This document shows positions 1-38,653 of a stretch of DNA of 64,000 nucleotides, one piece after another (the first letter of the stretch is position 1; each line of letters starts with the position of its first letter). This DNA is from Octopus sinensis (lineage: Eukaryota): positions 96,162,001-96,226,000 of the forward strand of contig NC_043005.1 in the NCBI RefSeq assembly GCF_006345805.1, written 5' to 3'. The notes under the pieces are model-generated. The model was given only the letters and a program-made list of their open reading frames with translations. It was not told where the DNA came from and ran no database searches. The translations under genes were made by a program, and so were the position numbers.

Positions 1-308
1 AATTTTGAAGCTATTTTTCGTACCTTTTATAAATGCCAAAAATATAAATTAGTAAGATTCGCTGAAATAGCAATTGAAGCCATTTTATTTCAATCTACTT
101 CCTTGGAATCCTGTTCTGATGCCACTTGAAATTATGTTTATATATTTGGTGCTCTTTTTTTTACATTTTGTTTTGAGGGCTGTTTTATTTTATTTTTTCC
201 CCCTTTTAGTAAATGTCTATTTGCCAAATAAGTATTGCATGCTGCAGTTACTGTCAACATTGTTTTATTGTTCCCTTTTTTTTTTTTATGCTCTACTTCA
301 TGTTGCAG

Positions 309-382
309 GCGTAGAAGACACAGAGAGGAGTTTGAATCACCAAGAGTAAAGAGATCTCGTATGGACTATGACAATAGGAATA
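309..382 (+). CDS. YTHDC1: YTHDC1 coding exon (RRRHREEFESPRVKRSRMDYDNRN)
   Basis: tgttgcag acceptor, gtaagt donor, phase 2 to 1. Confidence 0.8.
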
Positions 383-3300
383 GTAAGTATCAGCAGGAAA
401 TTTTATTCAGTCGGGTTTGTATAACTTAATTTGGAAATGTTCATTATTGTACATCAACATCAAAATAAATATCAAATGGAAATTGTAGTTGTGATACCTG
501 TTCCGGTGGCACGTGAAAAGCACCATCTGAACGTGGCCGTTGCCAGCACCGCCTTGACTGGCTTCTGTGCTGGTGGCACTTAAAAAGCACCAACCGATTG
601 TGGCTGCTGCCAGCCTCCCCTGGCATGTAAAAAGCACCCGCTACAGTCACGGAGTGGTTAGTATTAGGAAGGGCATCCAGCTGTAGAAACACTGCCAGAT
701 CAGACTGGAGCCTGGTGCAGCCGCCTGGCTTCCCAGACTCCAGTCGAACCATCCAACCCATGCTAGCACGGAAAACGGATGTTAAATGATGATGATAAGA
801 ATATAGTTCTAGATCCACATAAAATTATGGTGATAAAAGCTGGGATGTCTTTGATCATAGACTTGCTTGAACCTTGTTGAGTTGTGACTAAACAACAATT
901 ATAGTAATTCAATATACACCAACAGCTTCATTTTTTTTCTTTTTTTTTCTTTCTCATTCCATAACTGTTCTGTATGTTGTTCACATCACTTACTGTTGCA
1001 TGTTGGGATGATGAATTTATAATCAAATTTTATATTTTCCCCTTTGAAAGATCATGTTAGTGAATGGGCAATTGTTACATTATGTCTTTCCATACTTGAT
1101 TCAAATCAATGTAAGATTACTTAGCTAGTTTACAGATAAGATATATTCAAAGCAGACACTTAGTCATGTAATTACTAAGGGATGCAAATTGTGTGTTCAT
1201 ATACTGCCTGTTTACCTCATCCCCCACTTTTGTAATGTTTTGACACATGGTTTTCTTTACTGGCATGACATACTGGCAAGTCACACAAAAACTTACCTGT
1301 ACATGTGATCAGGTTTGATCCTATTTTGCAGCTCTTCATCTACTTAGCAACTTTGAGTAAATTTATGTAGATGGAAACTGTGAAACCCATTGGATTAAGT
1401 GTACCAGCTCTTGTTAGTAAATTGAATTTGTCACCTAGTTTAACACCATCATCGTCAAACCCTTAGTGGACCCTGTTGCAAGCATTTAAACGAGGTTCCT
1501 AGTCTCAAGGTTTATCAGTGAGTGATGGTTTCTTCCTCTCTTCTCTGAACAGTTTTGGAGACTCTGCAAAATATCATTGGTATTGCCTTGCCTCCTCCAA
1601 TAGGAAAAGAATTTTATTTCAAAATAAACTTTACACATGACTGAATAATAATGACATACCCCCTTTCTTTTTTTCATCACATGTTGTTTGGTATTATGAA
1701 AGGAACTCAACCACAAAATGTCCTGTCAAACAATATATCTATCAAAATGTATTAAATTCTAGTGTTCAGTTTCCTTAAAAAATTTTTTTCTTTTAAAACC
1801 CACTATTTCTATATGATGAAAGTTGCATTTTAACTGATTTGTGCCAACTACCTCTGGATATGGAAAGCACTCTCACTTAAATGTATTATTAAAAGATACC
1901 TTAGTTTCTCTTAACCCTTTTTATACCAACCCGGCTGAAACCGGCTCTGGCTCTGAGTACAAATGTCTTGTTTTCATAAGTTTTGAATTAAAATCTCCCA
2001 CCAAACTTTAGTCACAATTTATGTTCCTAACACTAGCTGAATGATAACTAAGTTATTTTACTAAATTCTTTGTTATATTTAAAATAATTGAAAGAAACAC
2101 AGAGCATCTCAACAGAAATACAGTAATGAAAGGATTAATAATGCATTTAATCCTTTAACACTCCTATTGCTCTGTCAAATGTAATACTTATTCTTTTCAC
2201 ATAACTCTACATTATCTTGTACCTTTGAGATTTTGATGATGTAATTGTATACTCATGACAATGTCATTTTAGAGTAGGTGTGTGATGAGAGGTCAGACCT
2301 AATCAGTTTGAACATAAATCAGGTGGAATATTTGAACTGAATATGGTCTGTTTAAAGAGCAGTCAGAATCATAAGAGCATTGGAAAAGATGCTTTACAGT
2401 ATATGTTCTGAGTTCAAATCCCACTATGCTTAATGGCCCTTCATTTATTCAGGGTCAATAAAGTACTGGTCAATTACTGGATTTGGTTTAATCAATAAAC
2501 TTATGGCCCTATGTTTTAAATATTTTGTAACGGACATGAATGATATATATGTGTTTTGTGGATAGGATACAACTATGTGTTGTTAGTTTGGAGGGATGCC
2601 TCATTGGCAGCAGTGGTGGAATATGCTTAACTGTTGTTTTGTCTTTGGTCAGGACTGACCAGAGACTAAACAACAATTAAGCATATTCCACCACTGCCAA
2701 TGAAAGATTCCTCCAAACTAACAACATAGGGCTGCTGACTGGTTTTGTTGAGAAGGTGAGATGTTCCAGTCATGGCCACATACACTCCTCTTGAACACAG
2801 ATGTAATCTGAGTAAGATTTTCGCTATTATGTTTAACAGAAAGTTTGATTGGCTGGTGGCTTTTAAATCTAAATACACAATGCAATCAATCCATAACTTA
2901 AATTGACTTGTTGACTATCACACCTGATTTTAAAAAGTCTTCTCTACAAAGATGTGGGTATTCTGTCTGGTGTGTGTGGTGGTAGTTGAGTACATTTATA
3001 TTAATATGTCTGTAAGAAACAATTATAATTCTGAAAGCATTAGGATTTAACCCATTAGCATTTAAGGTGGTCATATTTGACCCAAATAATCTATTTGTTC
3101 AAACTGGCCAGATCCAGCCTCTCACACCTATACTATAATGTCATTCTAAAAATAAACAATCATACCATCAAAATTTTGAAGCTACAAGTTACAGCATAAT
3201 TAATTACAAAACAGTGTGAATAAATTAGCATTACATTTGACTGAGATCTATAATTTCTTTTTTCCAGATTTAGATGCATATTACAAGGAAAGGCGGCCTG

Positions 3301-6300
3301 ATAGGTAAGTATTTTGCTTTGGAAATATTTAAAACTTAATTACAATCACTGCAATAAAGAAATGCTTATCTCTGTAACCTTTTTCATGCAACTTGGTTAC
3401 GTTGTATCACATTCATAGAGTATAAGATCAGATTTAAATGTTGTTGTCGTGTTACGTGATGTGTGTATGTTTCTGCATTTTCTAGGCCACCTCGTTATGG
3501 CGGAGTTCGCCGAGAAACATTCTTAAATGGAGTAAGTATACATTAACTCTCATTTTTACGTAAATGTCAGAATTAAAAAAAAAAAAAAAGACAAGAGAAA
3601 GCTAAATTTATCATTTTATTAATGTAACAGATGTATTATTTGCTAATTTCCTTTTATTGCTTATTCCGTATTGTATTTTCTTTCTAACTTTCTAATTGGA
3701 AGAACAGTTCAGTAAACATAGATCATGTTCCAATGACACAAACATTAACAATAATAATGTTGAACGACAAACTATTTGTGATTTGAAATGTCTGTGTAAC
3801 TTATTCTTTTCAATGAAGCACCATAACAGCTGTCTATGTGGAATTTTGTTCGGTTATGACACTATATATTTTTTTTAAAAAAAGCTCCCAAATCGCTGAA
3901 GTTAGTCTGGACAAAGCATGTTGATCTGTTGCTTGTTGATTGGCTTCCTTCATCACTTCATCTCTTTATTTTACTATTAGCTTCTTAAATAATGTCATTT
4001 TCTTTCTTCTTTTTTTATTTAGAAATAGTTGTCTTGAGATATTTGTTACTCATTAAGTAATCTTGTGCAGAGATGCTGTTTTAATATGGAACCGTTTTAC
4101 CAAACCTAATTATGAATGAATTTTCTTAGTCTTAAAATATCTAAAAAATATTGAAACTAGGCAACTGAGTTGATATATTACACATACTCGAATGTTACTT
4201 AGCCTCAGGTTCACCATCTTCTTGTATATCAGTGCCTTTTTTTTTTTTTTTAAAGTATGCTAGCATGGAAAAACAGATGCTAAATGATATTGGTGTATTT
4301 GAGAGAAATTAGCTGCTATTTTTAACTGGTCAGTCAACTGCATAAAGACTTGCTCGTTAACTCAATGATATTTTTGTCACAATAGATCTATCCATCTTTT
4401 TTTTTTGCCATGGGGAATTAGAAGAAATAGAGCTTCTTTTTACTTAGAATATCTTCAAATCTTCCCAGTTATTAAGATTTTGGCTTGGTTTTGAAAATCT
4501 TTCTTCACTGATATTTTTTGTAAGCAATGTTTTCTTAGAAAAGCTTAGAAAAAAATTATTAACTAAAGAAAACATTTCTGTTGAAATGCTTAGCGGTATT
4601 TCGTCTGCTGTTACATTCTGAGTTCAAACTCCATCAAGGTCAACTTTGCCTTTCGTCCTTTTGGGGTCAATCAAATAAGTACCAGTTACACACTGGGGTT
4701 GATGTAATCAACTTAAACCCTTTGTCCTTGTTTGTCCCCTCTATGTTTAACCCCTTGTGGGCAATAAAGAAATAAATGTAAGATAGTTTCTGATATATAC
4801 TTCAGTTATACTTCTGATATATCCTTTCAATTCTAAACAATGTTTCTTATACATTTATAACTACATTTCTCATTTATTAATGTGCAGATAGCACACATGG
4901 TAGAGAAGTGGGCTAAATGTTTTTTGTTTCATAATTTTGAATTCATATCCCCCACAATTGTCTGTCAGTAATAAAAGTACATATAGGAATATATATAAAG
5001 TCAAAATGCAATTATAGAAACTATCTATTTTTAATTTTTTATAGGGTCATGTTGCACTGTTTATATACCTGTTATTTTGACAGTTGACAGCGTATCAAGT
5101 TTCAAAGTGTTTAGGTTGTCCTTTACACAGAGAGATAGATGTGTGGGGAGCAAGATTAAATAGCATGTGTTAATGTGTTTCTTTGAAATGAATTTGTATA
5201 TGTGCATGCATGTACAGGATATGTATATGCATGTGCATGCACCACATACTTGCATAAAGAAAATTCAATGTTGAACTGTTACAATGTTCATATTTATTAC
5301 ACGGTAAAGCTGTTAAATCACAATTATTTACCTCTAAACAAATGTTTATGGAACTGCTCTTAGAGAAATAGAAATTCCCAGCATTTTGTTGATTTTTTTT
5401 TTTTTTTCAAACAAAAATTTTTTGAAACCTTAAAAATTTTTGTGAAAAAAAAAAAAAAAATATTGTGGCCTTGAAATTTTTCCTCATCCAAAACTTTTGT
5501 CTAGTGTTTCTTCTGCTCTTCATTTTTCTGCTGTACACAATTCCCACCCCTGGCCCATTCTCCAATATCTCTGGCATATTGCTAAATATTATCGATTTTG
5601 TTTTTGGCTCGCCCAGCAGTGGAACAGTGTGGCGAGCTCATGGACTTATCCAGCAGCAGGGGTACGGCCATTAGTCCGTCCATCTGTACGTACACCATTC
5701 TTTTCACTGTGATAACAGTTAACTATATTAACATTGATATCTTATATTTTATATTGATTTTTAAAGATTTTATTTATTTATATATTTATTTTTTGGAAAA
5801 GAGAAAAAAGAAAATCAGCTAATTACTTTAAAGATTAAAGAGAAAAAGACATCAAATATTTAATGAAAGCATAAAAGACTTCATATTTTCTAGTTAACAC
5901 ATTATCGTTTTAATGTACTCTCCTTGACTTGTTGTTTTCTACCTTTCTTCTGCTAGAAACTACATCAGCCGCCACTTTGTCAAGTTCCCATTTATAATAT
6001 CTTCTGTTAAATGTTTTCTCACTGCTTACATCTTGGTTCTCTTTTCTACAATTTTTTTTTCTTTTATATCACAACAAATACTTTTGGTAGCTAGAATTAA
6101 AATTTAGATTCGAGTTCTCTTTTCTCTAGCTTTTTGTTTTTGTTTACTTTAACTTTGTTATTCTGTATGTTGATAATTAAAAGAAAACTTTTTATTACCA
6201 TGTGGCTCAGTCACTCTGTGCCTCGCTCACCCTGTTACTCAAAATGCAGTGTTAAAAAAAACTAAACTAAAACTTATAAAATATTTACTTTTAGTGTATC

Positions 6301-6440
6301 TGTGTAATTTTTTCATGATAGCTTCATAAGTTGAAACAGAAAGTTTCATTCTCTCTTCTCCATTTGTCATATTTCTTATAGACTTTAGTTTATAATTTTC
6401 CATTATAGATATTCAAGTATCTCCATATTATATAAGTATA

Positions 6441-6480
<40 letters not shown>

Positions 6481-7865
6481 CACACATTTACACATACACA
6501 CACACACACTGCTTTTTTTTTTTAATGCATTTCACCTCGAGTATAAGCAAATTTGCTATTTACACTTTTGGTGTCCACACATGTAACTAACCCCACTCAT
6601 TCTGTAACCTTGATTATCATTTTTATTGGTGTTTCATCTTATTTTCAATTAAAACACTGGCTAGATAGTCCGCTGAACATTGCCAAAGTTTCATTGGTTT
6701 GCCTACCATTGTCATGATCTCTTGCGGAGTAGAGTAACATTGATACTTAAAATTAATTTAAAATTAATTATATAAATCTAATCTTAAAAAATAACGATGG
6801 TGTTTTCTCATTCTAGTGGAATATTTATTTAGAGTTACATCAGCAGTTACAATTTTCCATTGCATTAATTATGCATTTATTTTATCATCATTTGTATAAC
6901 TAATCTTGTATCTTATGAGACTATTGTATATTAAACTTATGGCTAGTTAACACTTCTTACTAAATTATCTTTATGTCCTCTTGCTAATTTCACTGAGTAA
7001 TTTTTATAAGCAGACTCATTGTCTACTTATTTAATCTTTCAGATTTAGGTTTTGATAAATTCATCAGATTATTTTCAATTAGTATCTAGTACTTTCATTT
7101 CTAGCATTTAAATTTTTAAAGTAAACTTTAAAATAGCCATATATTAAAATTAATCATTAACTAAAGTAAATTATTACTGGTTATTACTCTGTCATCCACA
7201 GTAAAATGGGGATTTTTTTTTCCCTTTTATTTTCTGTTTTCTAGTCATATAGTGACTACATGCGAGAGTTCCAACATGTAAGACCTCCACCGCCACCTAT
7301 GTCACCTTATGGCCCACCAGTAAGTCAGTTCAATTTATAGTTTTCACTTTTTGACAATTTTGTAGACCTAATTTTTGTTATAAAAAAAAATCTACATAAT
7401 TTCCAGACTAACATTATTAATGCTGTTGCAATTATCTTCATTGTTTTAGCCTCCTGCATATGGACATCATATGGATCCAATGGTCACCTATACTGGTCAT
7501 TATGATAACCGGCCGAGAAATTACATGACTCCTCCTGAGTATGGCCCAGCTTCGATTTCCAATCCCAGGCGCACAGATAAACGCTCAGCGAGTGCTGTTT
7601 GGGCAGAGAAACGTTCAGTAAGTCAAGTAGTCATCACGTTTTATTATTCTTTTTTTATTCATTCGTTTAATTTTCATTTATTTCTCCTGAGTGCTACATC
7701 TTTTAGTGGCAACCACATGGTTTACTGTTTTATGTAGCACTTCTACTGGCTGCTACATATTTTATCTCTTTTATGCCAGTCACTCTGTGATTTGCATGTT
7801 ATCTAGCTGATAACTATATTTTACTGGTCACTATGTAAATGTGTAGTTACTAGATGCTTTAGTTT

Positions 7866-7912
<47 letters not shown>

Positions 7913-7961
7913 ATATGACTAGTGGTTGCATGTCTTTATGTATTATTATGCAGATGGCTAT

Positions 7962-8009
<48 letters not shown>

Positions 8010-8383
8010 GTGTGTGTATGTGTATATATATATGTATTTTCATCAAACTCTTTCCATAATAATTTGTAATTATTGGAATGCCTTTCTTTTCAATGAAAAT
8101 GTATTTACTCTTTTAAAAGCATTTTTTGTTTTACTAGAGAGGGAGATTTTAACTTTTATACTTGTAATTTTTATTGATAAGCCATTTGCTCATTAATGGA
8201 GGACCTGCTTTCCCCAAATGATATAAGACAAAATGAATGACTAACTGACATAGTTAAGCAATATCCCACAATTCCTTTTGTTTTTTTCTGTTACAGTATG
8301 AGAGAGATGTTGATGATTTCCTCCGTAGAACTACACATGGGAATAGCTCCAGAGACCGACATCGCCACCGAGATCGCCGGTAA
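309..8383 (+). CDS. YTHDC1: YTH domain-containing protein 1 (nuclear m6A reader), 3' part; join(309..382,3268..3304,3486..3531,7245..7319,7450..7617,8297..8383)
   Basis: Six GT-AG exons with matching phases (2/1/2/0/0/0) splice to ...GGVRRETFLNG|SYSDYMREFQHVRPPPPPMSPY...|YERDVDDFLRRTTHGNSSRDRHRHRDRR*. This matches the recalled vertebrate YTHDC1 C-terminus (GVRRDVFLNGSYNDYVREF..., VDDFLRRT, RD-rich tail). The YTH domain lies upstream of the window. Confidence 0.9.
497..796 (+). mobile_element. SINE family A (RTE-type tail ending (TGA)n)
   Basis: GAGTGGTT.G..TTAGGAAGGGCATCCAGCTGTAGAAAC..CCAACCCATGCTAGCA..GTTAAATGATGATGAT. Confidence 0.85.
1915..2134. mobile_element. TTAA-flanked piggyBac-type MITE, family 1
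   Basis: TTAA at both ends, CCCTTT-type TIR; near-identical to 25414..25627. Confidence 0.75.
3268..3304 (+). CDS. YTHDC1: YTHDC1 coding exon (NLDAYYKERRPDR)
   Basis: tttttccag acceptor, gtaagt donor, phase 1 to 2. Confidence 0.85.
3486..3531 (+). CDS. YTHDC1: YTHDC1 coding exon (PPRYGGVRRETFLNG)
   Basis: ttttctag acceptor, gtaagt donor; conserved GVRRxxFLNG motif. Confidence 0.9.
4583..4775 (+). mobile_element. tRNA-derived SINE family B
   Basis: GAAATGCTTAGCGGTATTTCGTC..GAGTTCAAA (B-box)..AAGTACCAGTT..CACTGGGGT.GATGTAATC. Confidence 0.8.
7245..7319 (+). CDS. YTHDC1: YTHDC1 coding exon (SYSDYMREFQHVRPPPPPMSPYGPP)
   Basis: ttttctag acceptor, gtaagt donor; SYxDYxREF motif. Confidence 0.9.
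7450..7617 (+). CDS. YTHDC1: YTHDC1 coding exon (Pro/Tyr-rich)
   Basis: gttttag acceptor, gtaagt donor, 168 nt in frame. Confidence 0.88.
8297..8383 (+). CDS. YTHDC1: YTHDC1 terminal coding exon (YERDVDDFLRRT...RDRR*)
   Basis: ctgttacag acceptor; VDDFLRRT motif; TAA at 8381-8383. Confidence 0.9.
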   Translation, partial: YERDVDDFLRRTTHGNSSRDRHRHRDRR

Positions 8384-10991
8384 AAGCCATCATCAACAAT
8401 TGGATTACACTTGCAATTTAATTGCTACTTAATAACTAGTGGGTTGAAAGATGCTGTAAGCTGCAAAGACTATCTGCTTCTGGTGCTCAGCTATTGGTTT
8501 CGTGAAGTTACTGTCATCATTGTGCTGATATATTTTCTCCGTTAAAGATGAATTACTTCACACTTTCACCCAGCTTAAATCATCTGTCAAAAGATTGCTC
8601 CATCTTATTTTCAAACCCATTGACAAAATGTGAACATTCATTTTTGCCTCAATCTCTTTTACTATCTACAGATATTTTCATTCACTTCACACAATAGATC
8701 CCATGCAATAGTTTAAATATTTTGTAAAAACAAAATATCAATCACTTAAAAAAAAATAAACAAAATTTGAAACAAAATATGATTTTTATTTCTAAATTGC
8801 ATATATCTTTAAAGGGGGAAAAAGTTTCCTCTTTTTTTCCTTTTTTTTTTTTGTCTGTTTAACATCAAACACTTCATTCTTTATTTTCTAGTGATATATG
8901 AAGTACTTTCCTGCTGTATTATAATCCCTGCTTTCTCTGACTTGATCCTAGTATCAGTGTGATATTAGACCATTTTGAAAAAAAGTATTTATATTTTGAT
9001 ACATATTACAAATTTTACTGAAGGAGTTTTCCTCAGTTGACTTCTTTTTCTCTTGTAATATATATATATACATGGCAATGTTACATGGAATCATTGACTT
9101 CCATTCAAAAATATGTGGTAAACGTGATTTGTTTGTTTTTTATGTTTGACTGCTTTAAGACTTCATGTTGTTGGCTTTTAATGTTTGTTCCTTGTAGGAC
9201 TGTGGATGGTATTCAAAGTTCAGCACCAAACAAAAAAGAAATGGCATACTGCAATATGAAGCAGATATATTCACAGTAAAAAAAAAAAAAAAAGAGAGAG
9301 ACAAAGCTACTTTCAGTTTTAAGAAGCTCTAAATTTTAAGTAATTTGGTTATAATATATTGATGTATTTTCAAATTAATCTGAAGGTTTTTCAGTAAACC
9401 AAAACCAACACAATATTTGATATTGAAATATGAGCATATGATAAAAAAATAGTTTGGGTTATATTTCAGGAACTGTGTCTTAATATATAAATGGCTTCGT
9501 TCTATTTAATTTACTGACTGCTAAAAATGAAAATTGCTACATCAATGAGCTGCTACATTCAAGGATATTTTACTGTCTTGATTTTTGATGGTACAATGGA
9601 GATTGGCACAAGAAAAAACTATCAGCTATGAAACAGCTGCTATATTTTGTAAATCCTTCCAACCCGTAATAATTAAGTTTGGAGTATAGATGCTCAAAGG
9701 AGGAAAGAAATTATTATAGTCTTTTAAGAACAGTAATTAATTATAACTCGTAATATTTTTGATGATTCTTAGTTCTATATACTGTAGGAAAAGATTAGTT
9801 TTTGTTTCTAGACTAGTTTGGCTACAACAAATTAATTCACTGATGGCATTCTTGTAGTTCAAAGAAACTCTTATACTACTCTAAGTTGTCTCTTGATTTA
9901 TTTTTTGGAAGCCAACACAAAAGTCTGTTGCACTTTTGAGAATATTTCAGATTTGAAATCATTCTAAGCATTATAAAACTTTCAAACTATTTTGGTACAA
10001 GCCATATTGAGGAAGAACAAGTTGCTGGCTTTAGAAGTTGTCCAAGTACACCCTCAGTCTATATAAGTGTTTTAAAATTTATAAATTTGTTGTTTTTGAT
10101 TCAGGAAAGAACAAATGTTTTAATGAAATGCAGTTGTTGTTAGTTTGTCGCTGAAACATTTCATATTTCTCAGTTGAACAAAATATTGATTTTAATCTCA
10201 CGATGTCAATTTACAAGCAAGCAAAATCAACAAGCTGTTCTCTAATTATCACAATTGATTCTCATTATATTATATTCTTGTTAGAATATTATATGCTACA
10301 CAAGAGTGGTGATCATTTCTGAAACTGTAGAGGGATAAAACTAAATGCATCATAGTATTTGGTTTTTATTCCTCCAGCTTCTGAATCTGGATCTTACTCT
10401 GAATCACTTTGGCTTGCATGATTGTGTGGCAAAGAAGCTTGCTTCATCACGATATTGCTTTCAGGCTCATTCCCACTGCATGGGGATTTGACCAAATGTC
10501 TCTTACCATTACCTCATTGCAACCAAACACTGAAATTTGGTAGGCAGAAACTATGAAACCCTGTCAGAGGGAGTGTTCTTGGGTGGTAGACTTAATCCAT
10601 TGTCCAGTTTAGTATTTGGGTGCTTTAGCAGAGCACATTCTTTTGCAAGCATTTAACTTCCTCCTTTCCTCCCGTCACTCTTCAAGGACCTGTAAAAAAA
10701 TCCCTTTCCTCTCAACTAATTAAAAAAAAATTAATTTTTTTTAATCCTAGTAAGATATTGTGGTCAATTGATCAACTATGCACCACATAAAATATTTGAC
10801 TACGAGAGAAATTATTGTGTATCATTCAATACACTCAAGAACTGACACGAAAAATTTATATTCTGATGATGAGCAAGAAACATTGAGTAAAAGTAATCAA
10901 ATTAAAACACTGTTACTATTCTATTGTGCTAACAAACCATTAAACCAGATCCAAGTTAACATGAAAACCCAGAACCTTATATTTTGAAATT

Positions 10992-11271
10992 GTAGGAAAA
11001 ACAGAATTTAGAAAATGGTTAAATTTTAAAGTCGGAAAACCAGTTCTTTCACTTGTTGACAAGTATTAAAATACATTCAAACTATTTCTTGTCAAATTTT
11101 GTGTTCCAGAAAAAAATATTTGATGATACCAATGTATCATCAAATATTTTTTTCTGGAACACAAAATTTGACAAGAAATAGTTTGAATGTATTTTAATAC
11201 TTGTCAACAAGTGAAAGAACTGGTTTTCCGACTTTAAAATTTAACCATTTTCTAAATTCTGTTTTTCCTAC
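10992..11271. repeat. Perfect inverted repeat, 138-bp arms, 4-nt loop
   Basis: 10992..11129 is the exact reverse complement of 11134..11271; loop CAAT. Confidence 0.97.
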
Positions 11272-11357
11272 GGCCTATTTTTTCACAGGAGTTTTTCATC
11301 TCTTGTATGATGCTTGTATCCTACCAGTCTCAAATCTTTAAGTATGAGCTTCCACAC

Positions 11358-11363
11358 AATAAA
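11358..11363 (+). terminator. Candidate polyadenylation signal (AATAAA) for YTHDC1
   Basis: Canonical hexamer ~3 kb after the stop, with U/GU-rich sequence downstream; not unique in AT-rich DNA. Confidence 0.3.
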
Positions 11364-12263
11364 ATTATAAAAAGACTTAGGTTATTATACTGTTAATGCA
11401 ATTGCCAAATAACCAGTCATTTAGATTCTGAAAAATAAATTTGAATGTGCAATACATTTTGAATTCTAGTATTGTTTTGGTATTTGTGTGACCTTTCAGA
11501 GTAATTATAAACTCGAGAAGAGAAATAGATATAAATCTGGTGTTTATTAGGTAGTAATTTTCTGAAACACTGACTTAATTTAAAACTTTTTTTTTATCAA
11601 GCTTATCAGTTACATGTTAAATATATTTAATATATGAGCTATTTATTTATTTATTACCATTCCCGACATAATTTCATTAAGATGGTCTGAGTTTTTGAGT
11701 TTCTGTTCAGTAATTTGTTTTTTAATTTATGTATTGTAATTTGAGTAAATTAGTTTGCCAATTGCTACTTGTGCTAAAACCTATTAATATGCAGCTGCTA
11801 GGTAAAAGCAGATGAACATGACAGCTCAGGAAGTGTTCAACAGTCACCTTTGTACACAACATGGAGAAACAGATTTTACTTGTAATTGAACTAGTTTAAT
11901 CAAAACTATTTTCAATAAAACAGTTCAATGCAGAAAACTTTTCTTTGTGTACTTTTTTTTCCTCACTAAAATTAACAATTTTCAGTGTAGCTGTATTTAT
12001 ATCTTTGTTATTAGACATAATATCTTAATATTTAATATTTTAAAAATGTGGTCCCTACTTTCAAGATGTCAAAGCATTTGTTAAAGTGTTGCTGCATTAA
12101 GTGAAGCAACTACATAAGAGAACTGTTACTGTCTAGTACAATTCAAAGAACAAACTTTGTTCATTCATTTACTGCTATCTGTTACTACAAATACCAATCT
12201 TTGTTTTCAAATTCAATGTAATTTGTGGGCCATCAGGCAGGTGGTCTGTTTACTTCTAGTTCT

Positions 12264-12500
12264 TCATCATCATCATCGTTTAACGTCCGCTTTCCATGCT
12301 AGCATGGGTTGGACGATTTTGACTGAGGGCTGGTGAACCAGATGGCTGCACCAGGCTCCAATCTTGATCTGGCAGGGTTTCTACAACTGGATGCCCTTCC
12401 TAATGCCAACCACTCTGAGAGTGTTGTGGGTGCTTTTTACGTGCCACCGGCATGGGGCCAGTCAGGCGGTACTGGCAATGATCACGCTCAGATGGTGCTC
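12264..12500 (-). mobile_element. SINE family A
   Basis: Starts (CAT)n CGTTTAACGTCCGCTTTCCATGCTAGCATGGGTTGG. Confidence 0.85.
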
Positions 12501-12950
12501 ATGTCGCAAAATAATTTTTACTTACATATGCATTGCTTGCAGTAGAAATGGGACGATATACTGGGTTATGGGCCATTGCAAAACAAAGTTGCTGATCTCT
12601 TTACTAGACTGAGTCCTGGCATTTGACATCTATGGTACTATTGGACTTACAAAGCATTGCTCTTCATACTTCCATTGGCTACAGCTGTAGTACATGTCTT
12701 CTTGCAGAAAACGGAATGGAATAATTTTCAGCAACTATTAGAGAAAACGGTTATTTTATTTACACACACACAGTCTCATGTGAATCAGTATCTCATACTA
12801 GCTCAGCAACATTGATGTTTCAACAACACTTTGCTCTGATATTGCATTTACTCTACTACAAAGATGGGTTCAATACATTGGCATCAAAGGTCATTATGTA
12901 CAGGAAATATTAATTTTATCAATGAAGTTATTGGTTGAAACTAGATGTAT

Positions 12951-13455
12951 TCATCATCATCATCATCGTCCGTTTTCCATGCTAGTATGGGTTGGATGGT
13001 TTGACCTGGGTCTGGGAAGCCAGATGGCTGCACCAGGCTCCAGTCTGATCTGGCAGTGTTTCTACAGCTGGATGCCCTTCCTAACACCAACCACTCCGAG
13101 AGTGTAGTGGGTGCTTTTTACAGGCCAGGGGAGGCTGGCAACGGCCACGATCAGTTGGTGCTTTTTATGTGCCACCGGCACGGAAGCCAGTCAAGGTGGC
13201 GCTGGCATCAGCCACGTACGGGTGGTGCTTTCTACGTGCCACCGGCACAGGTATCACAGCTACAATTTCCATTTGATTTTTTGATGTTGATGTACTTGAC
13301 TCAATAGGTCTCCTCAAGCACAGCAAGCCGTCCTGCGGTCCAAGGCACTTTTGGATGGGCTGGGGCTTCTATGTGAAGCTGGTGCAGGAAACAGCCATGA
13401 ACTCACGTTATTTGTCGGGTCTTTGCAGTCACAGCATATCTCCAGAGGTCTCGGT
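12951..13455 (-). mobile_element. SINE family A, long copy with internal hairpin units
   Basis: Same family sequence. Confidence 0.85.
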
Positions 13456-13927
13456 ATTGGTTTATAAAACTATTTCACTCTACAATTTGGAAATTGTCAA
13501 ACATTCAACAGTTAAGTCATTGTGTGTGAAGACAGCAATTATGGTTTTATTGAGGAGAACACTGGAGTAGTTCACTGTTATTTAGATCAGGTCATAGTAA
13601 GCTAAGCCTTGCACTGAAAGGTAGCAAAGTACTCATGGCATCTATAGATAATCACTTTGCAGTTATATATTTAGGGATTCCTTCATCACCTAATTGTACT
13701 TTGACGTATTGATGAAAGATCTCAAACTTCTATATAAATGATACTAATTTATATAGTATCATTTATATATAACACTCCTATATAAACGATACTAATTTCA
13801 CTACTAAACCTCTTTCATGTAGATCAGTGATTTCTCAGAGAATATATTTAGACACACTAGCACACAAAGGCATACTTGTACACTGCAAGAAGTATCGAAG
13901 TGCATCAGTAACTTTTTAAAATATATC

Positions 13928-14134
13928 CAAGGGGATGCTGAAAAATTCCTGGCTTTAGGTAAAAGAAAATAAAAGAGGATCAGTTATGATTTTATTGAAC
14001 ATATTCTCTCACATTCACATGCTTATCGCAGTGGTCTTTCCATTTTTCTAAGTTATGTAAAAGAACTCGGAAGGATGGGCCTCTCATCAGGATTTTCGGG
14101 ATACCCTTAAAACCAGGAACTTTACAGCACCTCG
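13928..14134. mobile_element. Mariner-derived MITE (~210 bp)
   Basis: Imperfect TIRs GGATGCTGAAAAATTCCTGGCTTTA / TAAAACCAGGAACTTTACAGCACCTCG followed by TA. Confidence 0.6.
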
Positions 14135-14699
14135 TAATTTAAGGTTATAGAAATTCCATGCTGATGCTAAAGCATTATGAAAAATATGTAAGTCATAAAT
14201 ACAATTAGTAAACATAAATATAATTAGTCCATTCTACTGTAGGCACAATGCATGACATTTTACGAGAACCGGCTTACTCAGATCAACCCCAACTGCTACT
14301 TTGTTTATCAACCCAAGAAGGACAAAAGGTAAAGGTGAACTCAGTGGCATTTCAACTTGGAACATAATACTTGAAGAAATGCCCCTAAGTCTTTGTATCC
14401 AATGTGGTAACAAACCTCCCAGCTTGCCATGTTACACATTATATTTTAATAAAATGAGATAAACAATAGTTTTCTTTACATATCTTTTTATCTTGTTTCA
14501 GTCATTAGACACTGCAGACATGCTGGGGCACCATCTTGAAGAAATTTAATCAAATCACCCCCACGACTTAATTTTTTTTTAAGCCTGGTACTTTATCAGA
14601 CTTTTTTGCTGAACTGCTAAGTTGCAGGGATGTAAACACACCAGCACAAGTTGTCAAGTGGTGGTGGTGGTGGGGGACAAATATACACATATATTTATA

Positions 14700-15830
14700 T
14701 ATAAAATAGGAATTAGAGATAAAACCACTATTATGCAACTCAAACAGTGATATACATAAACCAATACATAAATAACAAATTATATATATATGTAATTTTT
14801 TTTTTTACTATATAAAACTTATAAATTAGATCTCAAAAAGTATAAAATGAATTATAAATATATAATAAGTAAAAACACTACGTACGTTTCATGGCTACAA
14901 TTAAATTCGAATTACAATTAAGTTTAAATTCAATTGAAATAAATTTAAATTTAAATTATAGTCAATCTTCAGGTTAATGATAATAGTTTTTATTAAAGAA
15001 ATAAATAAAATAATAATTTTTCTTATAGAAGAAAATCCATTAACTTAATTAGAAACTTAAAACATTAGGATTATTTCCTACAACACATTTATTATGTTAA
15101 ATATTTATTTTTAAGGTAAAAAAATAGATAGAAATATGTATTTATCTTTGAAGATATAATTTGGCTTTAAAAACATGATAAACTCTTGAATATAACTCAG
15201 TTATATTCCAATATTTAATTACCAAATTATTTAACAAAATAATCACTATTCATATTTTTAGATCTAAGTTCTCATCTAATAATTATAAAATATTTAAAAA
15301 TAAGTATCTAAATTATAATCAACAAATATAGTAATTAAAAATCTAAAATTTTCTCTATCAATAATTATATAGACATATAACTAAAAATAAATAAATTAAT
15401 TAGTCCATTATTACTTACATAAATATTATAAATATCAATAGAATATATTTATGAAATACATTTAAAAATCAAATTAAAAACATAACCTATCTTAAAAGAA
15501 CCGTATAACTATTTTACGATCTATATACCTCAGTGACTAAGTAATATCTTACAATTTACGTACAGTTATAATCTAATAATTAAATATACATATCTAAAAT
15601 ATCAACAACAACTAAATAATTATAGAATCAAATTAACAATCAGTAGTTATTGCAACACTTCTTAAAATGTCATTAACTAAAATTTGAAAACGGGAATTTT
15701 CCATCTGTTTATTCTATTTCTGTTAACGTAATTCCACAAGTTTTCTTATAAACGCTTAAAAGACACGGTTTTCGAGAGTTAAGTAAACCTTTTTCTATTT
15801 AAGAAATTTTAAGATATATAGCTACAAGAT
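14700..15830 (-). mobile_element. Extremely AT-rich decayed element, possibly Penelope-like
   Basis: CTGAAGA...GAAACGTACGTA motif at 14879-14972 (minus); faint TEIE*TDGKFPF resemblance to the PLE RT FTxExE..LPFLD motif at ~15690-15730. Confidence 0.35.
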
Positions 15831-16249
15831 AATGCATGATTGACTGAAAACAATGTGAATAAATAAGCAGTGCATCAGAGTAACCTGAAAGCTAAATGGT
15901 TAAAGTTGGTTGTTTAACCCCAAATCAGCCCTGATTGAGCAAGGCTTTAATTGATGGCCTTCACCATCCATTTCATTTTTTGTGTAACTAATACTACGAT
16001 GTCTAATGTGTTCTTCCCACTTTAAGATGGCTGGGATTGAAAGTGCTTTGGGGAACTTGGCTGCTATTTCTAGCAGGTTGAACTACTGTGTAGATGCTGG
16101 TGTATTTAGAGATGTGAGACTGGCAGAAATCATTCTCTGTTCAAGCTACTTATACTTGTGTCCTGTTTTTAATTAATTGCTACAAACTAATGAAATATTC
16201 CGTTGTACATTACTCCATCTCCTACTCAAGGGGGGCTTGAGCAATGTTA

Positions 16250-16775: not shown

Positions 16776-16863
16776 AGATAGACAGATGAAAGCCATATAG
16801 ATAGACAACAGATAAGAGAGAGGGAGATAGAAGATATGTAGCCAGTTACATAGATAAGAGAAA

Positions 16864-17240
16864 TCATCATCATCGTTTAACATCCGTTTTCCATGCGTTG
16901 AACGATTTTGACTGAGGGCTGGCGAACCAGATGGCTGCACCAGGCTCCAATCTTGATCTAGCAGAGTTTCTACAACCGAATGCCAACCACTCCGAGAATG
17001 TAGTGGGTGCGTTTACATGCCACCAGCATGGGAGCCAGTCAGGTGGCACTGGCAACAACCTTGCTCAAATCTTTTTACACATGACACCGGCATAGGTGCC
17101 AGTAAGGCGATGCTGGTAACGATCACACTCGAATGGTGCCTTTTACATGCCACCGGTATGGAAGCCAGTTAGCCGCTGTGGCAACGATCAGGCTCTTAGC
17201 ACCCTATGAGCACGGGGAACAAGTGCCAGTAAGGCGATGC
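16864..17240 (-). mobile_element. SINE family A
   Basis: Same family sequence. Confidence 0.85.
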
Positions 17241-18735
17241 AGTAAGACAGATAAATAACTTATGCAGCAAGGAGAAGAAACCTTTAACCCTTTAGCATTT
17301 AAACTGACCACATCTGGCTGAAATATTTTACCTGTTTTATGTCCAAACTGGCTAGATATGACCTCTCACAACTATCCTACAATGTCCTTCTAAAAATATA
17401 CAAATAACATCATCAAAATCTCAATGCCACAATATAATAATTAATAGAAAACAATGTCAATAAAGAAGCATTACATTTGACAAAATAATCTGGAAGTTCC
17501 ATGATTGAGACTTCCTCAGGTAAAGCATAGCCTTCTCTCTCATCTCATATAGGTCGTCTCAAAGGATGCCCCATTTTAGGAGTTTCAGGTGCGCATACAA
17601 TAGGAATCATAGGGCACTGCTCCATGTGGTCCTGCAGTTTCCATCTAAGAATATTAGGGTCCCATCCATTTTCTTGTATTCAAGATCTTCTGCATGATAT
17701 CCTGCTTGTTCAAAGCCAGGAATCTGATCTGTTGGGTCCTGCTGATAACTAAATCCATGCCCTACTGCTGACACTTCGATTTATTGTCATTAAGATTTGT
17801 CTGTCTCCTGGTAAGACCTCCTTGAAGATTTCTCTCCCTCCAGCATAGCTCTCCTGGTCAATGGGGCACACAGGCACTTCACTGCAACATGGTACTTGGT
17901 GAATTGGCCATTGACTACACAGTAGTTCTTCTGCCCTTTGACAGGTCTTAATTTATGTCCCGCGGGGTGTCCAACAATCACCCTCCTCACCAAGCAAGCT
18001 AGATAGGATTACCAGTTTAGTCGCCGACAACCCAACCATGTTGTACCGGGTTACATGTTACCAGTAGTGCTCTTTGTATCTGCCAAATAAGTGGTAAGAG
18101 AAACCATATAATGATGTACAATAACATAACGAGTAGACGCACAATTATAACTAAAGGAAAGTATGGATAAAATATCTTCATAAATTTGCCAAGATCAGAT
18201 GAAAATATTATTATACAGATACTATATTTTCCAGGATATAAGTAGAATTTTTCAAACCAAAATTTACAGCCAAAAAAGTTGAGCTGACTTATACATCAAG
18301 ATTAATTTGTAAGATCAAAAATTCCATGTGAAACAGCAGGATTCGAAAAGAAAGTGACAATGTTAGAATGTTTACATAACATATTATATCAACTTGTATA
18401 CCAGAAAATACAGCAGGGTGTCAAGAGACATATTTAGATAGACAGTGAAGATTGTGTATGAGAGAGAGAGACTGAAAGAAAGACAGTTCTGTTCATGCAT
18501 AAAAGAAAAATTAAGACCAGATTCTTTTTTTTATCAAATATCATTTATTTCATAATATTCTCATTCAACATGACTGGTACGTTCCTTCCCCAGACAAATG
18601 GCTGGAACTTGAAATCTGTTTCTTTTGTTTTTTTTGTTTTTTTTATTGTTGTCTTTAATCATTTTTCTTCAGATACATATATACATATACATGTATGTAT
18701 ATATATACACACATATATACATGTGTATGTGTATA

Positions 18736-18769
<34 letters not shown>

Positions 18770-21700
18770 CATACACATATATATATTTATATATATATAT
18801 ACACACACATATGTATGTATGTATATTATAATCACTAGATAAGAGATGAAGTAGAGAAGAGAAAATAAAAATATGGAGGTGGGTGTGGTGGATATGAGAG
18901 CAGCAGTTATTGACAGCGGCAAAGGACTAGGAAGAAAATGAAGGGAGCAAGGGTTAGAGTAACAGAGAGTTATAAAAACAAACATCTTTATTCCTTTTGG
19001 ATGTTCATGGATAGTTTGGAAACTAATGAATTCTTCTGTATGTAAGAGAAAAAAAAGGAAGAGTAGGGGACAATAAAGGCAGCAGGGAGAGGGAGTGAAA
19101 AGATCTGATATAGAGGGCAGTATGTGGTGATGGCGATGGTGATCATTTATTAAATGATGATTTTGAAATGATATTAACATAGAGTAGTGGTGATGGTGGT
19201 GAGATGTTGGGGGAGTTAAAGTATCTCCCTCCCCTGTCACACTGAAAACGAAAATTCAGAAAAAGAAAAAAAAGCGCACTTAAAAAAAAAAAAACTTTTT
19301 TTCTTTTCTTCTTTTTATAAAAAAGACATTAAAAAAAAATTTTCTTACAGAAACATTTGGAGAAGTTTCCAAATATATTTTTTAAAAAAACTCAGTAATT
19401 AAAACAAAAAAATAAACCCAAAAAACAAAAGAAAAACCTGCTAAAATAAGAGAGGGAGAATATAGGTGTCAGGTATTTTGGAAATGAGAAAAAATTTAGA
19501 ACTGAATAGTGTTGAATATGTATATATGTGTATGTGTGTGTGTGTATATGTGTTTGTAAGAGTAGGTGATGGCGGTGGTATGATGGTGATGATGATGGTG
19601 GTGATGGTAAAAATGGATTCATTGAATGATGATGAATGAGCAGTTTTGATTGGCACACAGGTATTTCATTCAGGTTTTACTTCTTTATTTCATTTTGTTT
19701 TTTTAAATTTAAAAAAAAAAATTTTTTTTTTGTTACTGTTGTTTTCTTAATCCAAGAAATTATATCAATTAGAATAACACATGTACACCTTTTTCTTTTC
19801 TTCTTTCTTTTTGAGGGTGGAGAGGGTGTAAGAGAGAGCGGGTAGGGAGTTTTATTTATTTAAATCATTTTTCAGTTGTTAAAGGGTCATGTGTAAGGGG
19901 GACCCCCCAACCCCTGCCCAACCCTCCAGATTCCCCCTTTGTTATCACAAACATGCAATTGTATGTGTATGTATAACACACACACACACACCCTCTCTCC
20001 TTTTCTCTCCCATTCTTTTTCACTCTCTTCTTGATATCTCAATCGGATTATTACAAACATGCAATTGTGTATTGAAGAAATCCCCACCCTAAACTCCCAC
20101 CCAAGCTTGCTGTTATCACAAACACGCATCATAAAGTAATACTAGGTACAAAAGGCACCCCTGCCTTCCCCCAACTGTTATCACAAATACACACAAACAA
20201 ACTATGCTGTGATAAATTGAACAAAATAATAATAAAAAGTGAAGAAAAGAAATCCAGAAAAAAACAAATAAAAAAAAAGGATTCAAATGCAGAAAAATAA
20301 CGTGCTAATAGATTACAGATCTAATTAACTTAGATCTACTTACCAAATGAAAAAAATTTTAAAAGTCCTAAAGAAGGCACACTTAGTGTTTATGAGTTAA
20401 ATTACCTAAGTTTTATATTATTTATTTTATTCTGTATCTTGTAATAGGAAATGAAGAAGCAAACTTCAATATCTCACCCCCACCCCCAAATTTATTTAAG
20501 CAACTTATCTACCAAACTGATAGGAATTAATTTCACGCATCTTCCCACCCCACCCCACAACTGTCTGTTTAATCACTTTTGAGCTATGCACAAGGCCAAG
20601 GGAAAAATGTTTCAAAGAAATTACTCCTTCCACATACACATAAAAAAAAAAAGGTTTTGTAAGAAAACACTCTTGAATATTTTCTTTACAAAACACAATA
20701 TTTCATCTTGGAGGTGTACTTGCCAGGAAAGTGGTTTGATCTGAGTCAGTGTGTTGAAAGTAAAATGATTGCAGTGAAGATGATGATACATATTAGCTTT
20801 TCAAAAACACACAAACTTAACTTCACTTAAAATATTTATTATTTGGTATCAAAATTTTCATCAGAAACGAAATTTTGATACAAATAGTAATTACAGTCTT
20901 CATGTGCTTTTGAGTGGCTAATACGCATCTTCCATTCTGCAATCATTTATTTCATATTATTATACTTTAAAAGAATGAAAAAGATATGCTTTAAAAATCA
21001 GAACAATGAAGTATTGTGCTGCATACTATAAAAGCAACTGGTCGAATCCTCTATTGTAGATGCTATCTTTAGGCAATAAACAGCAGGGTATCTAGACTAG
21101 AAACAGCAACCCAATCTCACCAAATATCATATTTTGATAGAAGAATAGAAGCTATTCAATTTTAAATGAATAAATAAAACAGGGATGGCCTTCCTGCTAC
21201 TTAATTTCATATTACTGTGAATTCCATAAGCTTTGGGTTTATAAAGGCAATATTACATACTCACGATGTGCATACAAAATAGATTAACCTGTTATAGCCC
21301 AAACCTCTCCAAGCCAAATGAGGGAGGATGCATCTAGGCAGTCATTTGATATGCTAGAAATAGTAGCAATCTTTGAAATGATAACTCTATAGTCTTAGAA
21401 AAGGACACAGATCAGTGCTAATGGAACTGCAGATCAATGATCAAAGATGCCCAAGCATTGGTCATCCTGTCTTTCTTTACCCCTGCAGCATTTAAACCAG
21501 CCATATCCAGCTCATTCAAATATTCTAGTCCTCTCACACCTACCTTACAATATCATTCTAAAAATAAGCAACCACATCATCAAAATTCTGAAGCTACAAG
21601 ATAACGCACGATTAATTCAAAATAAATTAATAAACATTACATTTGTAATGCTTATTTTCTTATAAAATAAGCCTCTGCAATAATACCAAAGAGCTTGAAG

Positions 21701-22204: not shown

Positions 22205-22847
22205 TATAAACAACTTATAAGTGAGGGCTAAAGAAAATTATTTCAAAGCCAATATGCTGATAACAGACTATTAAATCGTCAATTTCCACATATTATTTAC
22301 TCGCTACAGAAAAAAACACGAAGAACTGTAATCAGGCAAGCCGGCTGTTAGAATTTTTTAAAAAGTTTGTTATTTCTATATTGAATCAATTTTCTGTAGA
22401 AAAAAACTTCATCCTATATTAGTAGTAGACTTATTACTACTCGCTATAGGGACTGGTAACCACTATAACCTATAGTGGAGAAGTCAACACGTTGTGCTGA
22501 GGCTGACCAAAGAATTTTATTTTTAGATATATCTGGGGTACTTATATGTACTCATGATTTTTGCTTCGTTTTTTTCCTTGGGCGCATGTAAGTATCTTAT
22601 TTATATTCTTTCGTATGTTCTACTGAAGAGGAAAGAATCTTTTATGAGATTAATTCTGAAATTGATTCAATATAGAAATAACGAACTTTTTAAAAAAATT
22701 CTAACGGCCAGCTTGCCCGATTACAGTTCTTCATGTTTTTTTCTGTAGCGAGTAAATAATATGTGGAAATTGACAATTTAATAGTCTGTTATCAGCATAT
22801 TGGCATTGAAATAATTTTCTTTAGCCCTCACTTATAAGTTGTTTATA
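22205..22847. repeat. Imperfect inverted repeat, ~188-bp arms, ~265-bp spacer (MITE-like or fold-back duplication)
   Basis: 22205..22392 is the reverse complement of 22659..22847 with several mostly transition mismatches. Confidence 0.85.

Positions 22848-28832: not shown

Positions 28833-28863
<31 letters not shown>

Positions 28864-30034: not shown

Positions 30035-30086
<52 letters not shown>

Positions 30087-31270: not shown

Positions 31271-31320
<50 letters not shown>
28833..31320. repeat. Near-identical tandem duplication, period ~1.22 kb, bounded by (CA)n tracts
   Basis: caagcatgcatagatgcacc recurs at 28861 and 30085; the units match apart from microsatellite or homopolymer length and a short insertion. 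Confidence 0.95.
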
Positions 31321-31321
<1 letters not shown>

Positions 31322-31351
31322 GCACACACATATATATATATATATACATAC

Positions 31352-31877: not shown

Positions 31878-31931
<54 letters not shown>

Positions 31932-32351: not shown

Positions 32352-32394
<43 letters not shown>

Positions 32395-32400
32395 ATTATG
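31870..32400. repeat. Long compound (TA)/(TG)/(TACA) microsatellite
   Basis: Directly visible; similar tracts at 7866-8040, 18680-18820, 33000-33210, 38590-38650, 43285-43340, 50285-50340. Confidence 0.95.

Positions 32401-38588: not shown

Positions 38589-38653
<65 letters not shown>

What the first reader, a model, noticed from the sequence alone, without database searches (positions are those of the whole stretch)
10992..11271. Perfect 138-bp-arm hairpin just upstream of a polyA signal, in the putative YTHDC1 3' UTR
Seen: the arms are exact reverse complements with a 4-nt loop (CAAT), no TIR/TSD signature and no other copy in the window. It lies 2.6 kb after the YTHDC1 stop and ~87 nt before an AATAAA (11358). 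Established: long perfect dsRNA is an ADAR and Dicer substrate, and coleoid cephalopods have very extensive A-to-I editing. Inference: if transcribed, it could be a hyper-editing, nuclear-retention or endo-siRNA module on the m6A-reader mRNA. Zero mismatches imply a very recent fold-back duplication, ongoing arm conversion, or an assembly fold-back artefact.
Basis: partly seen in the sequence, partly recalled or inferred. Interest (0 to 1): 0.7.

Follow-up and report, generated by a model that had tools for sequence, protein, structure and literature searches.

The report
Perfect 280-bp palindrome downstream of YTHDC1
A flawless 138-bp-arm inverted repeat really is in the sequence 2.6 kb after a YTHDC1-like gene, but it looks like a brand-new snap-back duplication (or an assembly error) in non-coding DNA rather than an evolved RNA module, and nothing here shows that it is transcribed.

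Summary
Arms 10992-11129 and 11134-11271 are exact reverse complements around a CAAT loop. There is no other copy in the 64 kb. The next-longest perfect short-spacer palindromes are (TA)n runs of 29 nt.

The upstream gene is a YTHDC1-like gene (stop TAA 8381-8383), so the hairpin starts 2,608 nt after the stop.

- 16% of all window positions have an AATAAA within 100 nt downstream, so that proximity alone means little.
- A proximal AATAAA at 8755 would give a ~0.4 kb 3'UTR, the octopus median. The hairpin needs a ~3.1 kb distal isoform.
- Weak sequence signals favour such an isoform: no AATAAA from 8761 to 11357, T>A skew to ~13.5 kb, and a GU-rich element after AATAAA 11434.

No read, transcript or orthologous locus could be reached, and the cephalopod origin was not verified.

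Best reading: one recent template-switch (snap-back) inverted duplication of unique non-coding DNA, probably neutral. The main rival is an assembly artefact. A palindromic MITE is not excluded, because a TA target-site duplication would be hidden inside the palindrome. Interest is low to moderate.

The parts
10992..11129 (.). Left arm of the palindrome (138 nt, 26% G+C)
   Evidence: Exact reverse complement of 11134-11271. Unique in the window.
11130..11133 (.). Central 4-nt spacer CAAT
   Evidence: Read directly. It forms the tetraloop in both the RNA and the DNA folds.
11134..11271 (.). Right arm of the palindrome (138 nt)
   Evidence: Its first base G equals the first base after the arm (11272), so there is 1 nt of junction microhomology if this arm is the inserted copy.
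8297..8383 (+). Last coding exon of the YTHDC1-like gene (YERDVDDFLRRTTHGNSSRDRHRHRDRR) with stop TAA at 8381-8383
   Evidence: An AG acceptor precedes 8297 and the frame was read. The peptide YERDVDDFLRRTT is shared with P0001, which follows a YTH-domain ORF on Logan contig L001.
8755..8760 (+). Proximal AATAAA, 372 nt after the stop. It is the only AATAAA between the stop and the hairpin.
   Evidence: It would give a ~0.4 kb 3'UTR, the size of the O. vulgaris median (PMC9699675). Its downstream element is weak (rank 54 of 132).
11358..11363 (+). First AATAAA after the hairpin (87 nt after the right arm)
   Evidence: Its downstream element is unremarkable (rank 27 of 132).
11434..11490 (+). 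Best candidate distal polyA site: AATAAA 11434-11439 plus the GU-rich run TTGTTTTGGTATTTGTGTG at 11472-11490
   Evidence: Third-best GU-rich downstream element among 132 plus-strand AATAAA hexamers. This is motif-level evidence only.

Best explanation
The palindrome is a real but very young structural mutation. In one event, a nascent or repair DNA strand snapped back on itself. It copied 138 nt of the adjacent unique sequence in reverse complement and then returned to the original template. In the four-point template-switch model this is: leave at about 11133, restart at 11129, copy back to 10992, and resume at the base now numbered 11272. The event inserted one arm next to its source and left a 4-nt loop. 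It lies in non-coding DNA between two convergent genes: the YTHDC1-like gene on the plus strand and a tuberin/TSC2 orthologue on the minus strand. It has had no time to accumulate mismatches and is most likely neutral and possibly polymorphic. If the YTHDC1-like gene uses a distal polyA site at about 11.36-11.46 kb, the long isoform would carry a 138-bp perfect dsRNA stem, which would be an ADAR and Dicer substrate. That would be a by-product, not an evolved function. Shown here: the structure, its uniqueness in the window and the gene context. Inferred: the mechanism, the age and any transcription.
For: - Both boundaries are abrupt. Identity is 100% over 138 nt and then there is no complementarity at all beyond 10992 and 11271. 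This is the signature of a single copying event rather than a decaying old repeat.
- The source and the copy are adjacent, 4 nt apart, as in short-range template switching. That process is documented to create perfect hairpins in one step, also at sites with no pre-existing repeat (PMC10710096; PMC5453318).
- The arm is unique sequence, not part of the SINE-like or mariner-like families present in the window.
- Against an artefact: the window has no N in 64 kb, and unique sequence continues on both sides. The documented long-read foldback artefact joins two whole read halves and would not give a 138-nt internal insert (PMC12338684).
- Real AT-rich near-perfect palindromes of 190-600 bp exist in animal genomes, for example the human PATRRs (PMC1851657).
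- Weak support for transcription through the site: AATAAA runs at 0.34/kb against 1.34/kb for TTTATT across 8383-11357, the same sense-strand depletion as in the YTHDC1 introns (1.19 against 2.98). The two become equal, at 2.37/kb each, across 11358-16000. AT skew stays negative to about 13.5 kb.
Against: - No raw reads, second assembly or orthologous locus could be examined, so neither the genomic reality nor the ancestral empty site is shown.
- 138 nt is much longer than the template-switch events characterised in primates. The miRNA study cited above screened for stems of 30-55 nt.
- Junction microhomology is only 1 nt, which is the chance level.
- Base-skew comparison cannot tell which arm is ancestral.
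- A second near-perfect duplication lies in the same window: a 1.22-kb tandem repeat at 28844-31335. This could mean either a duplication-prone genome or an error-prone assembly.
Confidence: 0.55

Rival explanations
1. It is an assembly or polishing artefact. The genome has only one arm, and the assembler, gap-filler or polisher walked back along the reverse strand for 138 nt before rejoining the true path.
For: Zero mismatches and razor-sharp boundaries are what software produces. Perfect long palindromes with tiny spacers are unstable in vivo (established knowledge; PATRR literature). Another essentially perfect duplication sits in the same window, the 1.22-kb tandem at 28844-31335. No independent sequence of this species could be found to confirm the centre or the junctions.
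Against: The window is gap-free, and unique sequence continues for more than 10 kb on the left and more than 50 kb on the right. An internal 138-nt inverted insert needs two precise breakpoints. The described long-read foldback artefact has one breakpoint near the read middle, with arms running to the read ends, and occurs in a minority of reads (PMC12338684), so it should not survive consensus.
Confidence: 0.28
2. It is a copy of a palindromic (fold-back or MITE-like) transposable element of the Tc1/mariner kind. It would be inserted at a TA, and the duplicated TA would be hidden as the outer bases of the palindrome.
For: TA occupies 10993-10994 and 11269-11270, just inside the palindrome ends. 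The extra G/C pair outside could be a 1-in-4 coincidence. Tc1/mariner-like elements with about 160-nt terminal inverted repeats are present in the same window, at 22205-22847 and 56867-57572.
Against: There is no second copy, even a diverged one, in 64 kb that carries 12 or more copies of a SINE-like family. The termini (GGAAAAACAG) resemble neither of the mariner-like elements in the window. The arms are 100% identical, whereas those elements have 94-96% arms. Exact-match scans for the arm found nothing in the metagenome or viral contig collections, although these are poor proxies for an animal genome.
Confidence: 0.08
3. It is a selected RNA element: an hpRNA or endo-siRNA source, a hyper-editing or nuclear-retention module, or a nascent miRNA, in a long YTHDC1 3'UTR isoform.
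For: A 138-bp perfect stem would be an excellent ADAR and Dicer substrate (established knowledge). In O. vulgaris most A-to-I editing falls in introns and 3'UTRs where hairpins lie (PMC9699675). There are weak signs of a distal polyA site just after the hairpin. Template-switch hairpins can seed new miRNA genes (PMC10710096).
Against: A perfect palindrome carries no signature of selection, because there is no covariation or conservation to measure. The arms match no other sequence in the window, so no target is evident. Rfam gives only sub-threshold, both-strand hits to unrelated miRNA families, for example mir-649 at 49 bits against a gathering score of 100 and plant MIR828 at 48 against 69. 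That is generic hairpin scoring. Functional hpRNAs in Drosophila derive from their target genes (PMC10317233).
Confidence: 0.05

Closest known systems
Short-range template-switch mutations (four-point model; Loytynoja and Goldman 2017, PMC5453318; Monttinen et al. 2023, PMC10710096)
   Same: A reverse-complement copy of immediately adjacent sequence is made in one event. It yields a perfect hairpin with a short loop, with no need for a pre-existing repeat.
   Different: Documented events are mostly tens of nucleotides; the miRNA study screened stems of 30-55 nt. Here the copied tract is 138 nt. The ancestral state is not available to confirm the event.
Human palindromic AT-rich repeats (PATRR11, PATRR17, PATRR22; PMC1851657)
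   Same: These are near-perfect, AT-rich palindromes of a few hundred bp (190-600 bp) with little or no spacer, located in non-coding DNA. They are cruciform-prone and technically hard to sequence.
   Different: PATRRs are polymorphic, are known translocation hotspots, and are usually not 100% symmetric. No instability or polymorphism data exist here.
Drosophila hairpin RNA (hpRNA) loci producing endo-siRNAs (PMC10317233)
   Same: Both are long inverted repeats able to fold into an extended dsRNA stem.
   Different: hpRNA arms derive from, and target, other genes. They are independently transcribed, are defined by Dicer-2-dependent 21-nt reads, and have imperfect arms. None of this is shown here, and no target homology was found in the window.
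Palindromic MITEs that give rise to miRNA hairpins (for example human MADE1 and the mir-548 family; cited from my own knowledge, not checked here)
   Same: Almost the whole element is one inverted repeat with a tiny loop. The TA target-site duplication blends into the palindrome.
   Different: Those are high-copy families of about 80 bp with diverged copies. This is a single 280-bp perfect copy in 64 kb.
Foldback artefacts in long reads (Heinz, Meyerson and Li, PMC12338684)
   Same: Forward and reverse strand of the same locus are joined head to head, so the result looks like a perfect inverted duplication.
   Different: The artefact spans whole read halves with one breakpoint near the read centre. 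Here a 138-nt inverted insert has two breakpoints and unique flanks.

Membership tests
Template-switch (snap-back) inverted duplication | A tract that is the exact reverse complement of nearby sequence on the same chromosome | tested here: met
   138 of 138 nt are complementary and the source is 4 nt away.
Template-switch (snap-back) inverted duplication | Ancestral or outgroup allele lacks the inverted copy (empty site) | not testable with these tools
   Ten ORFs around the site are absent from the protein/contig index. The loop-spanning translation found only spurious hits. A related species exists in Logan (L003-L005, 84-89% identity), but its hairpin locus could not be fetched.
hpRNA / endo-siRNA locus | Arms homologous to a target gene | tested here: inconclusive
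   The arm has no similarity to anything else in the 64-kb window. The rest of the genome was not available.
hpRNA / endo-siRNA locus | Transcription and Dicer-sized small RNAs from the arms | not testable with these tools
   No RNA data for this organism were reachable.
miRNA precursor | Match to a curated family at its gathering score, and a stem of about 60-90 nt with typical imperfections | tested here: not met
   The best Rfam hits are all below gathering, fall on both strands, and belong to unrelated human and plant families: mir-649 at 49.4 against 100 bits, MIR828 at 48.1 against 69, and mir-4659 at 46.3 against 92. The stem is 138 bp and perfect.
MITE / fold-back transposon | Target-site duplication flanking the inverted repeats | tested here: inconclusive
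   There is no direct repeat outside the palindrome (flanks ...GAAATT and GGCCTA...). However, TA at 10993-10994 and 11269-11270 could be a hidden TA duplication.
MITE / fold-back transposon | Multiple dispersed copies | tested here: inconclusive
   It is a single copy in the window at word size 7. There were no exact hits in the metagenome or viral contig collections. Genome-wide copy number is unknown.
PATRR-like palindromic AT-rich repeat | Near-perfect palindrome of hundreds of bp, AT-rich, with a minimal spacer | tested here: met
   280 bp, 74% A+T, 4-nt spacer; the DNA hairpin folds at -156.5 kcal/mol.
PATRR-like palindromic AT-rich repeat | Size polymorphism, or breakage and rearrangement at the centre | not testable with these tools
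   No population or read data were available.
3'UTR element of the YTHDC1-like mRNA | Lies between the stop codon and a polyA site that is actually used | tested here: inconclusive
   Stop at 8381-8383. A proximal AATAAA at 8755 lies upstream of the hairpin, and distal AATAAA hexamers at 11358 and 11434 lie downstream. There is an AATAAA-free gap of 2,603 nt (P(0) = 0.024, although gaps of 2.3-2.5 kb occur elsewhere). AATAAA 11434 has a strong GU-rich element. No transcript evidence was available.
Long-read foldback artefact | A single breakpoint with the two halves of a read mapping to the same place on opposite strands | tested here: not met
   The structure has two breakpoints, 138-nt arms, and unique sequence on both sides, unlike the description in PMC12338684. 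Reads themselves were not available, so other kinds of artefact remain open.

The most novel reading that the evidence does not exclude
The palindrome is genomic, lies inside a neural-type long 3'UTR isoform of the nuclear m6A reader YTHDC1, and was born in one template-switch step. It would be a newborn 138-bp perfect dsRNA that is already hyper-edited or diced, and so measurably changes YTHDC1 mRNA fate. That would be a caught-in-the-act example of a regulatory dsRNA module arising de novo on an RNA-modification reader.
Probability: 0.05. Interest if true: 0.55.

Novelty: new member of a known kind. Interest (0 to 1): 0.22.

Why it matters
If it is genomic, it is an unusually long and clean example of a one-step snap-back duplication. 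It would be useful as a natural test of how long a perfect AT-rich palindrome survives in an animal germ line. If a long YTHDC1 isoform includes it, it would also show what a cell does with a newborn perfect dsRNA in an mRNA. If it is an artefact, it flags a class of assembly error worth screening for, because the same window also holds a near-perfect 1.22-kb tandem duplication. Either way it tells us nothing yet about YTHDC1 regulation.

Tried and rejected
1. Orthologous or independent sequence.
- The C-terminal YTHDC1 peptide found only one distant transcript ORF (P0001, 68% identity). Its 3'UTR shows no real similarity to the window.
- The YTH-domain search returned no cephalopod protein; the best named hit was Lottia at 71%.
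- Exact look-up of ten ORFs around the hairpin found none in the collection.
- A tuberin exon search uncovered genomic Logan contigs of a related species (84-89% identity).
- An HMMER search of 1.84 billion representatives with the loop-spanning 52-aa translation gave only three low-complexity hits.

2. Exact DNA scans with arm segments in the metagenome contigs (two scans) and viral contigs gave 0 hits.

3. Papers citing the SRA runs: none found, so the organism stays unverified.

4. Rfam gave only generic sub-threshold hairpin hits. I rejected a miRNA reading.

5. Which arm is ancestral: the AT skew of each arm matches its own flank, so this is uninformative.

6. Considered and rejected without dedicated tests:
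- a parvovirus or densovirus terminal hairpin, or a hairpin-telomere junction (no dedicated search for viral genes was made near the hairpin; the stem is simple, unbranched and AT-rich);
- a Helitron 3' hairpin (far too long);
- a transposon excision footprint (far too long).

7. Pfam on nine minus-strand open segments between 16 and 41 kb gave no hits.

Full report
**Observation**

The window contains a perfect palindrome. Positions 10992-11129 and 11134-11271 are exact reverse complements (138 nt each) separated by CAAT.
- No dinucleotide-preserving shuffle of the window gives any match.
- Among all perfect inverted repeats with spacers of 0-10 nt, the next longest are 29-nt arms made of (TA)n microsatellite.
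- Complementarity stops abruptly at both outer ends.
- The arms are 26% G+C.
- The RNA fold is -230 kcal/mol (z = -39.7). The single-stranded DNA fold is -156.5 kcal/mol.
- blastn at word size 7 finds no other copy, even a diverged one, of the arm or of either flank. The nearest repeat is a SINE-like family that begins about 1 kb to the right, at about 12262.
- The window has no N.

**Gene context**

Three open segments on the plus strand end in a last coding exon at 8297-8380 (YERDVDDFLRRTTHGNSSRDRHRHRDRR). The stop TAA is at 8381-8383.
- The concatenated peptide matches one protein in the 5.8-billion-sequence collection, P0001, at 68% identity.
- On its Logan transcript contig, P0001 directly follows, and slightly overlaps, an ORF carrying Pfam YTH (PF04146).
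- That YTH part matches YTHDC1 proteins across animals. The closest named hit is Lottia gigantea at 71%.
- The YTHDC1-like call is therefore supported, and the hairpin starts 2,608 nt after the stop.
- No cephalopod protein appeared in any search, and the run accessions are cited in no held paper.

On the minus strand lies a tuberin/TSC2 orthologue.
- It has a Rap_GAP exon at 43748-44062.
- Three stretches align to human tuberin 7dl2_A, including the last coding exon at 33452-33685.
- The two genes are convergent. The hairpin lies in the 25-kb stretch between their stop codons, close to the YTHDC1 end.

**Is it in the 3'UTR?**

Evidence against, or neutral:
- The AATAAA 87 nt downstream (11358) is not informative by itself. 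AATAAA occurs 2.06 times per kb on this strand, and 16% of all positions have one within 100 nt downstream.
- An AATAAA at 8755, 372 nt after the stop, would give a UTR of about 0.4 kb. That matches the 350-380 nt median measured for Octopus vulgaris (PMC9699675). The hairpin would need a roughly 3.1-kb isoform.

Evidence in favour, all weak and at motif level:
- There is no AATAAA between 8761 and 11357. A first-order Markov model expects 3.9, so P(0) = 0.024, although gaps of 2.3-2.5 kb also occur elsewhere.
- Sense-strand depletion of AATAAA relative to TTTATT is seen in the YTHDC1 introns (1.19 against 2.98 per kb). It continues to 11357 (0.34 against 1.34) and then vanishes (2.37 against 2.37).
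- AT skew stays negative to about 13.5 kb.
- The AATAAA at 11434 is followed by TTGTTTTGGTATTTGTGTG. That is the third-best GU-rich downstream element of 132 hexamers.

My estimate is that transcription through the hairpin is about as likely as not, and that it is unproven.

**What is it?**

The sharp boundaries, the perfect identity, the adjacency of source and copy, and the unique non-repetitive sequence fit a single snap-back or template-switch event.
- That mechanism is documented to create perfect hairpins in one step, even without a pre-existing repeat (PMC5453318; PMC10710096).
- In the four-point description, the strand leaves at about 11133, restarts at 11129, copies back to 10992 and resumes at 11272, or the mirror image of this.
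- Junction microhomology is 1 nt (G), which is no more than chance.
- The tract is several times longer than the primate events studied so far.
- Perfect identity over 276 paired bases implies a very recent event, or ongoing conversion between the arms.
- I saw nothing that suggests selection, and a perfect palindrome offers no covariation to test.

**Rivals**

*Assembly artefact.* This cannot be excluded without reads.
- The described long-read foldback artefact joins whole read halves at one breakpoint (PMC12338684). It does not naturally give a 138-nt internal insert with unique flanks in a gap-free contig.
- However, the same window holds a second essentially perfect duplication, a tandem of period about 1222 nt at 28844-31335. 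That keeps suspicion alive.

*Palindromic MITE.*
- Mariner-like elements with 160-nt terminal repeats are present in the window.
- Against this reading, the element is single-copy in the window, its termini differ from those elements, and its arms are perfect.

*Selected RNA element.* There is no positive evidence. Rfam gives only sub-threshold hits, on both strands, to unrelated miRNA families.

**What could not be done**

I could not reach reads, transcripts or an orthologous locus.
- Ten local ORFs are absent from the contig index.
- Arm segments have no exact match in the metagenome or viral contig collections.
- A loop-spanning translation found only low-complexity hits among 1.84 billion representatives.
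- A related species, 84-89% identical over window 47351-48847, exists as Logan genomic contigs from SRR11869390, SRR11869391 and SRR11869394. Assembling its version of this site is the most direct evolutionary test.

**Verdict**

My probability estimates are:
- a recent, probably neutral snap-back inverted duplication: about 0.55;
- an assembly artefact: about 0.28;
- a transposable element: about 0.08;
- a functional RNA module: about 0.05.

It is a new member of a known kind and of modest interest.

Noticed in passing
window 28844-31335: A near-perfect tandem duplication with a period of about 1222 nt (blocks 94-100% identical, several at 100%), containing microsatellites. It is a second 'zero-age' duplication in the same window, and is either very recent or an assembly duplication.
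   Followed up: partly
window 33452-61070, minus strand: A tuberin/TSC2 orthologue. It has a Rap_GAP exon at 43748-44062, an exon at 47459-47908 ([13 protein letters not shown]...) and a last coding exon at 33452-33685 (...[12 protein letters not shown]...EDFTDYS). It is convergent with the YTHDC1-like gene.
   Followed up: partly
window 22205-22847 and 56867-57572: Two Tc1/mariner-like elements with terminal inverted repeats of about 160 nt (96% and 94% identical). The second appears TA-flanked, and the open segment at 57259-57447 reads like a transposase remnant, although it gave no Pfam hit. A further transposase-like open segment lies at 51258-51719.
   Followed up: partly
window 621-796, 12262-12500, 12950-13127, 16863-17055, 37596-37832, 42142-42321, 45403-45636, 49448-49597, 61273-61499, 63579-63803: A SINE-like repeat family of about 240 nt with at least 12 copies in both orientations, 74-95% identical to one another.
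   Followed up: no
whole window: The polyA hexamer shows strand asymmetry that tracks the direction of transcription. AATAAA is depleted relative to TTTATT across the plus-strand gene (1-8382: 10 against 25). The reverse holds across the minus-strand gene (38001-57000: 47 against 8). AT skew flips sign near 13.5 kb.
   Followed up: partly
L003-L005 (Logan SRR11869391, SRR11869394, SRR11869390), matching window 47351-48847: Genomic contigs from a related species, 84-89% identical across exon and intron. They show that public reads of a close relative exist and could resolve the ancestral state of the hairpin site.
   Followed up: partly
window 18650-18830 and 31880-32400: Long compound microsatellite arrays of the (TATG/TACA/TA)n type. 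They produce many spurious low-identity inverted and direct repeat pairs.
   Followed up: no
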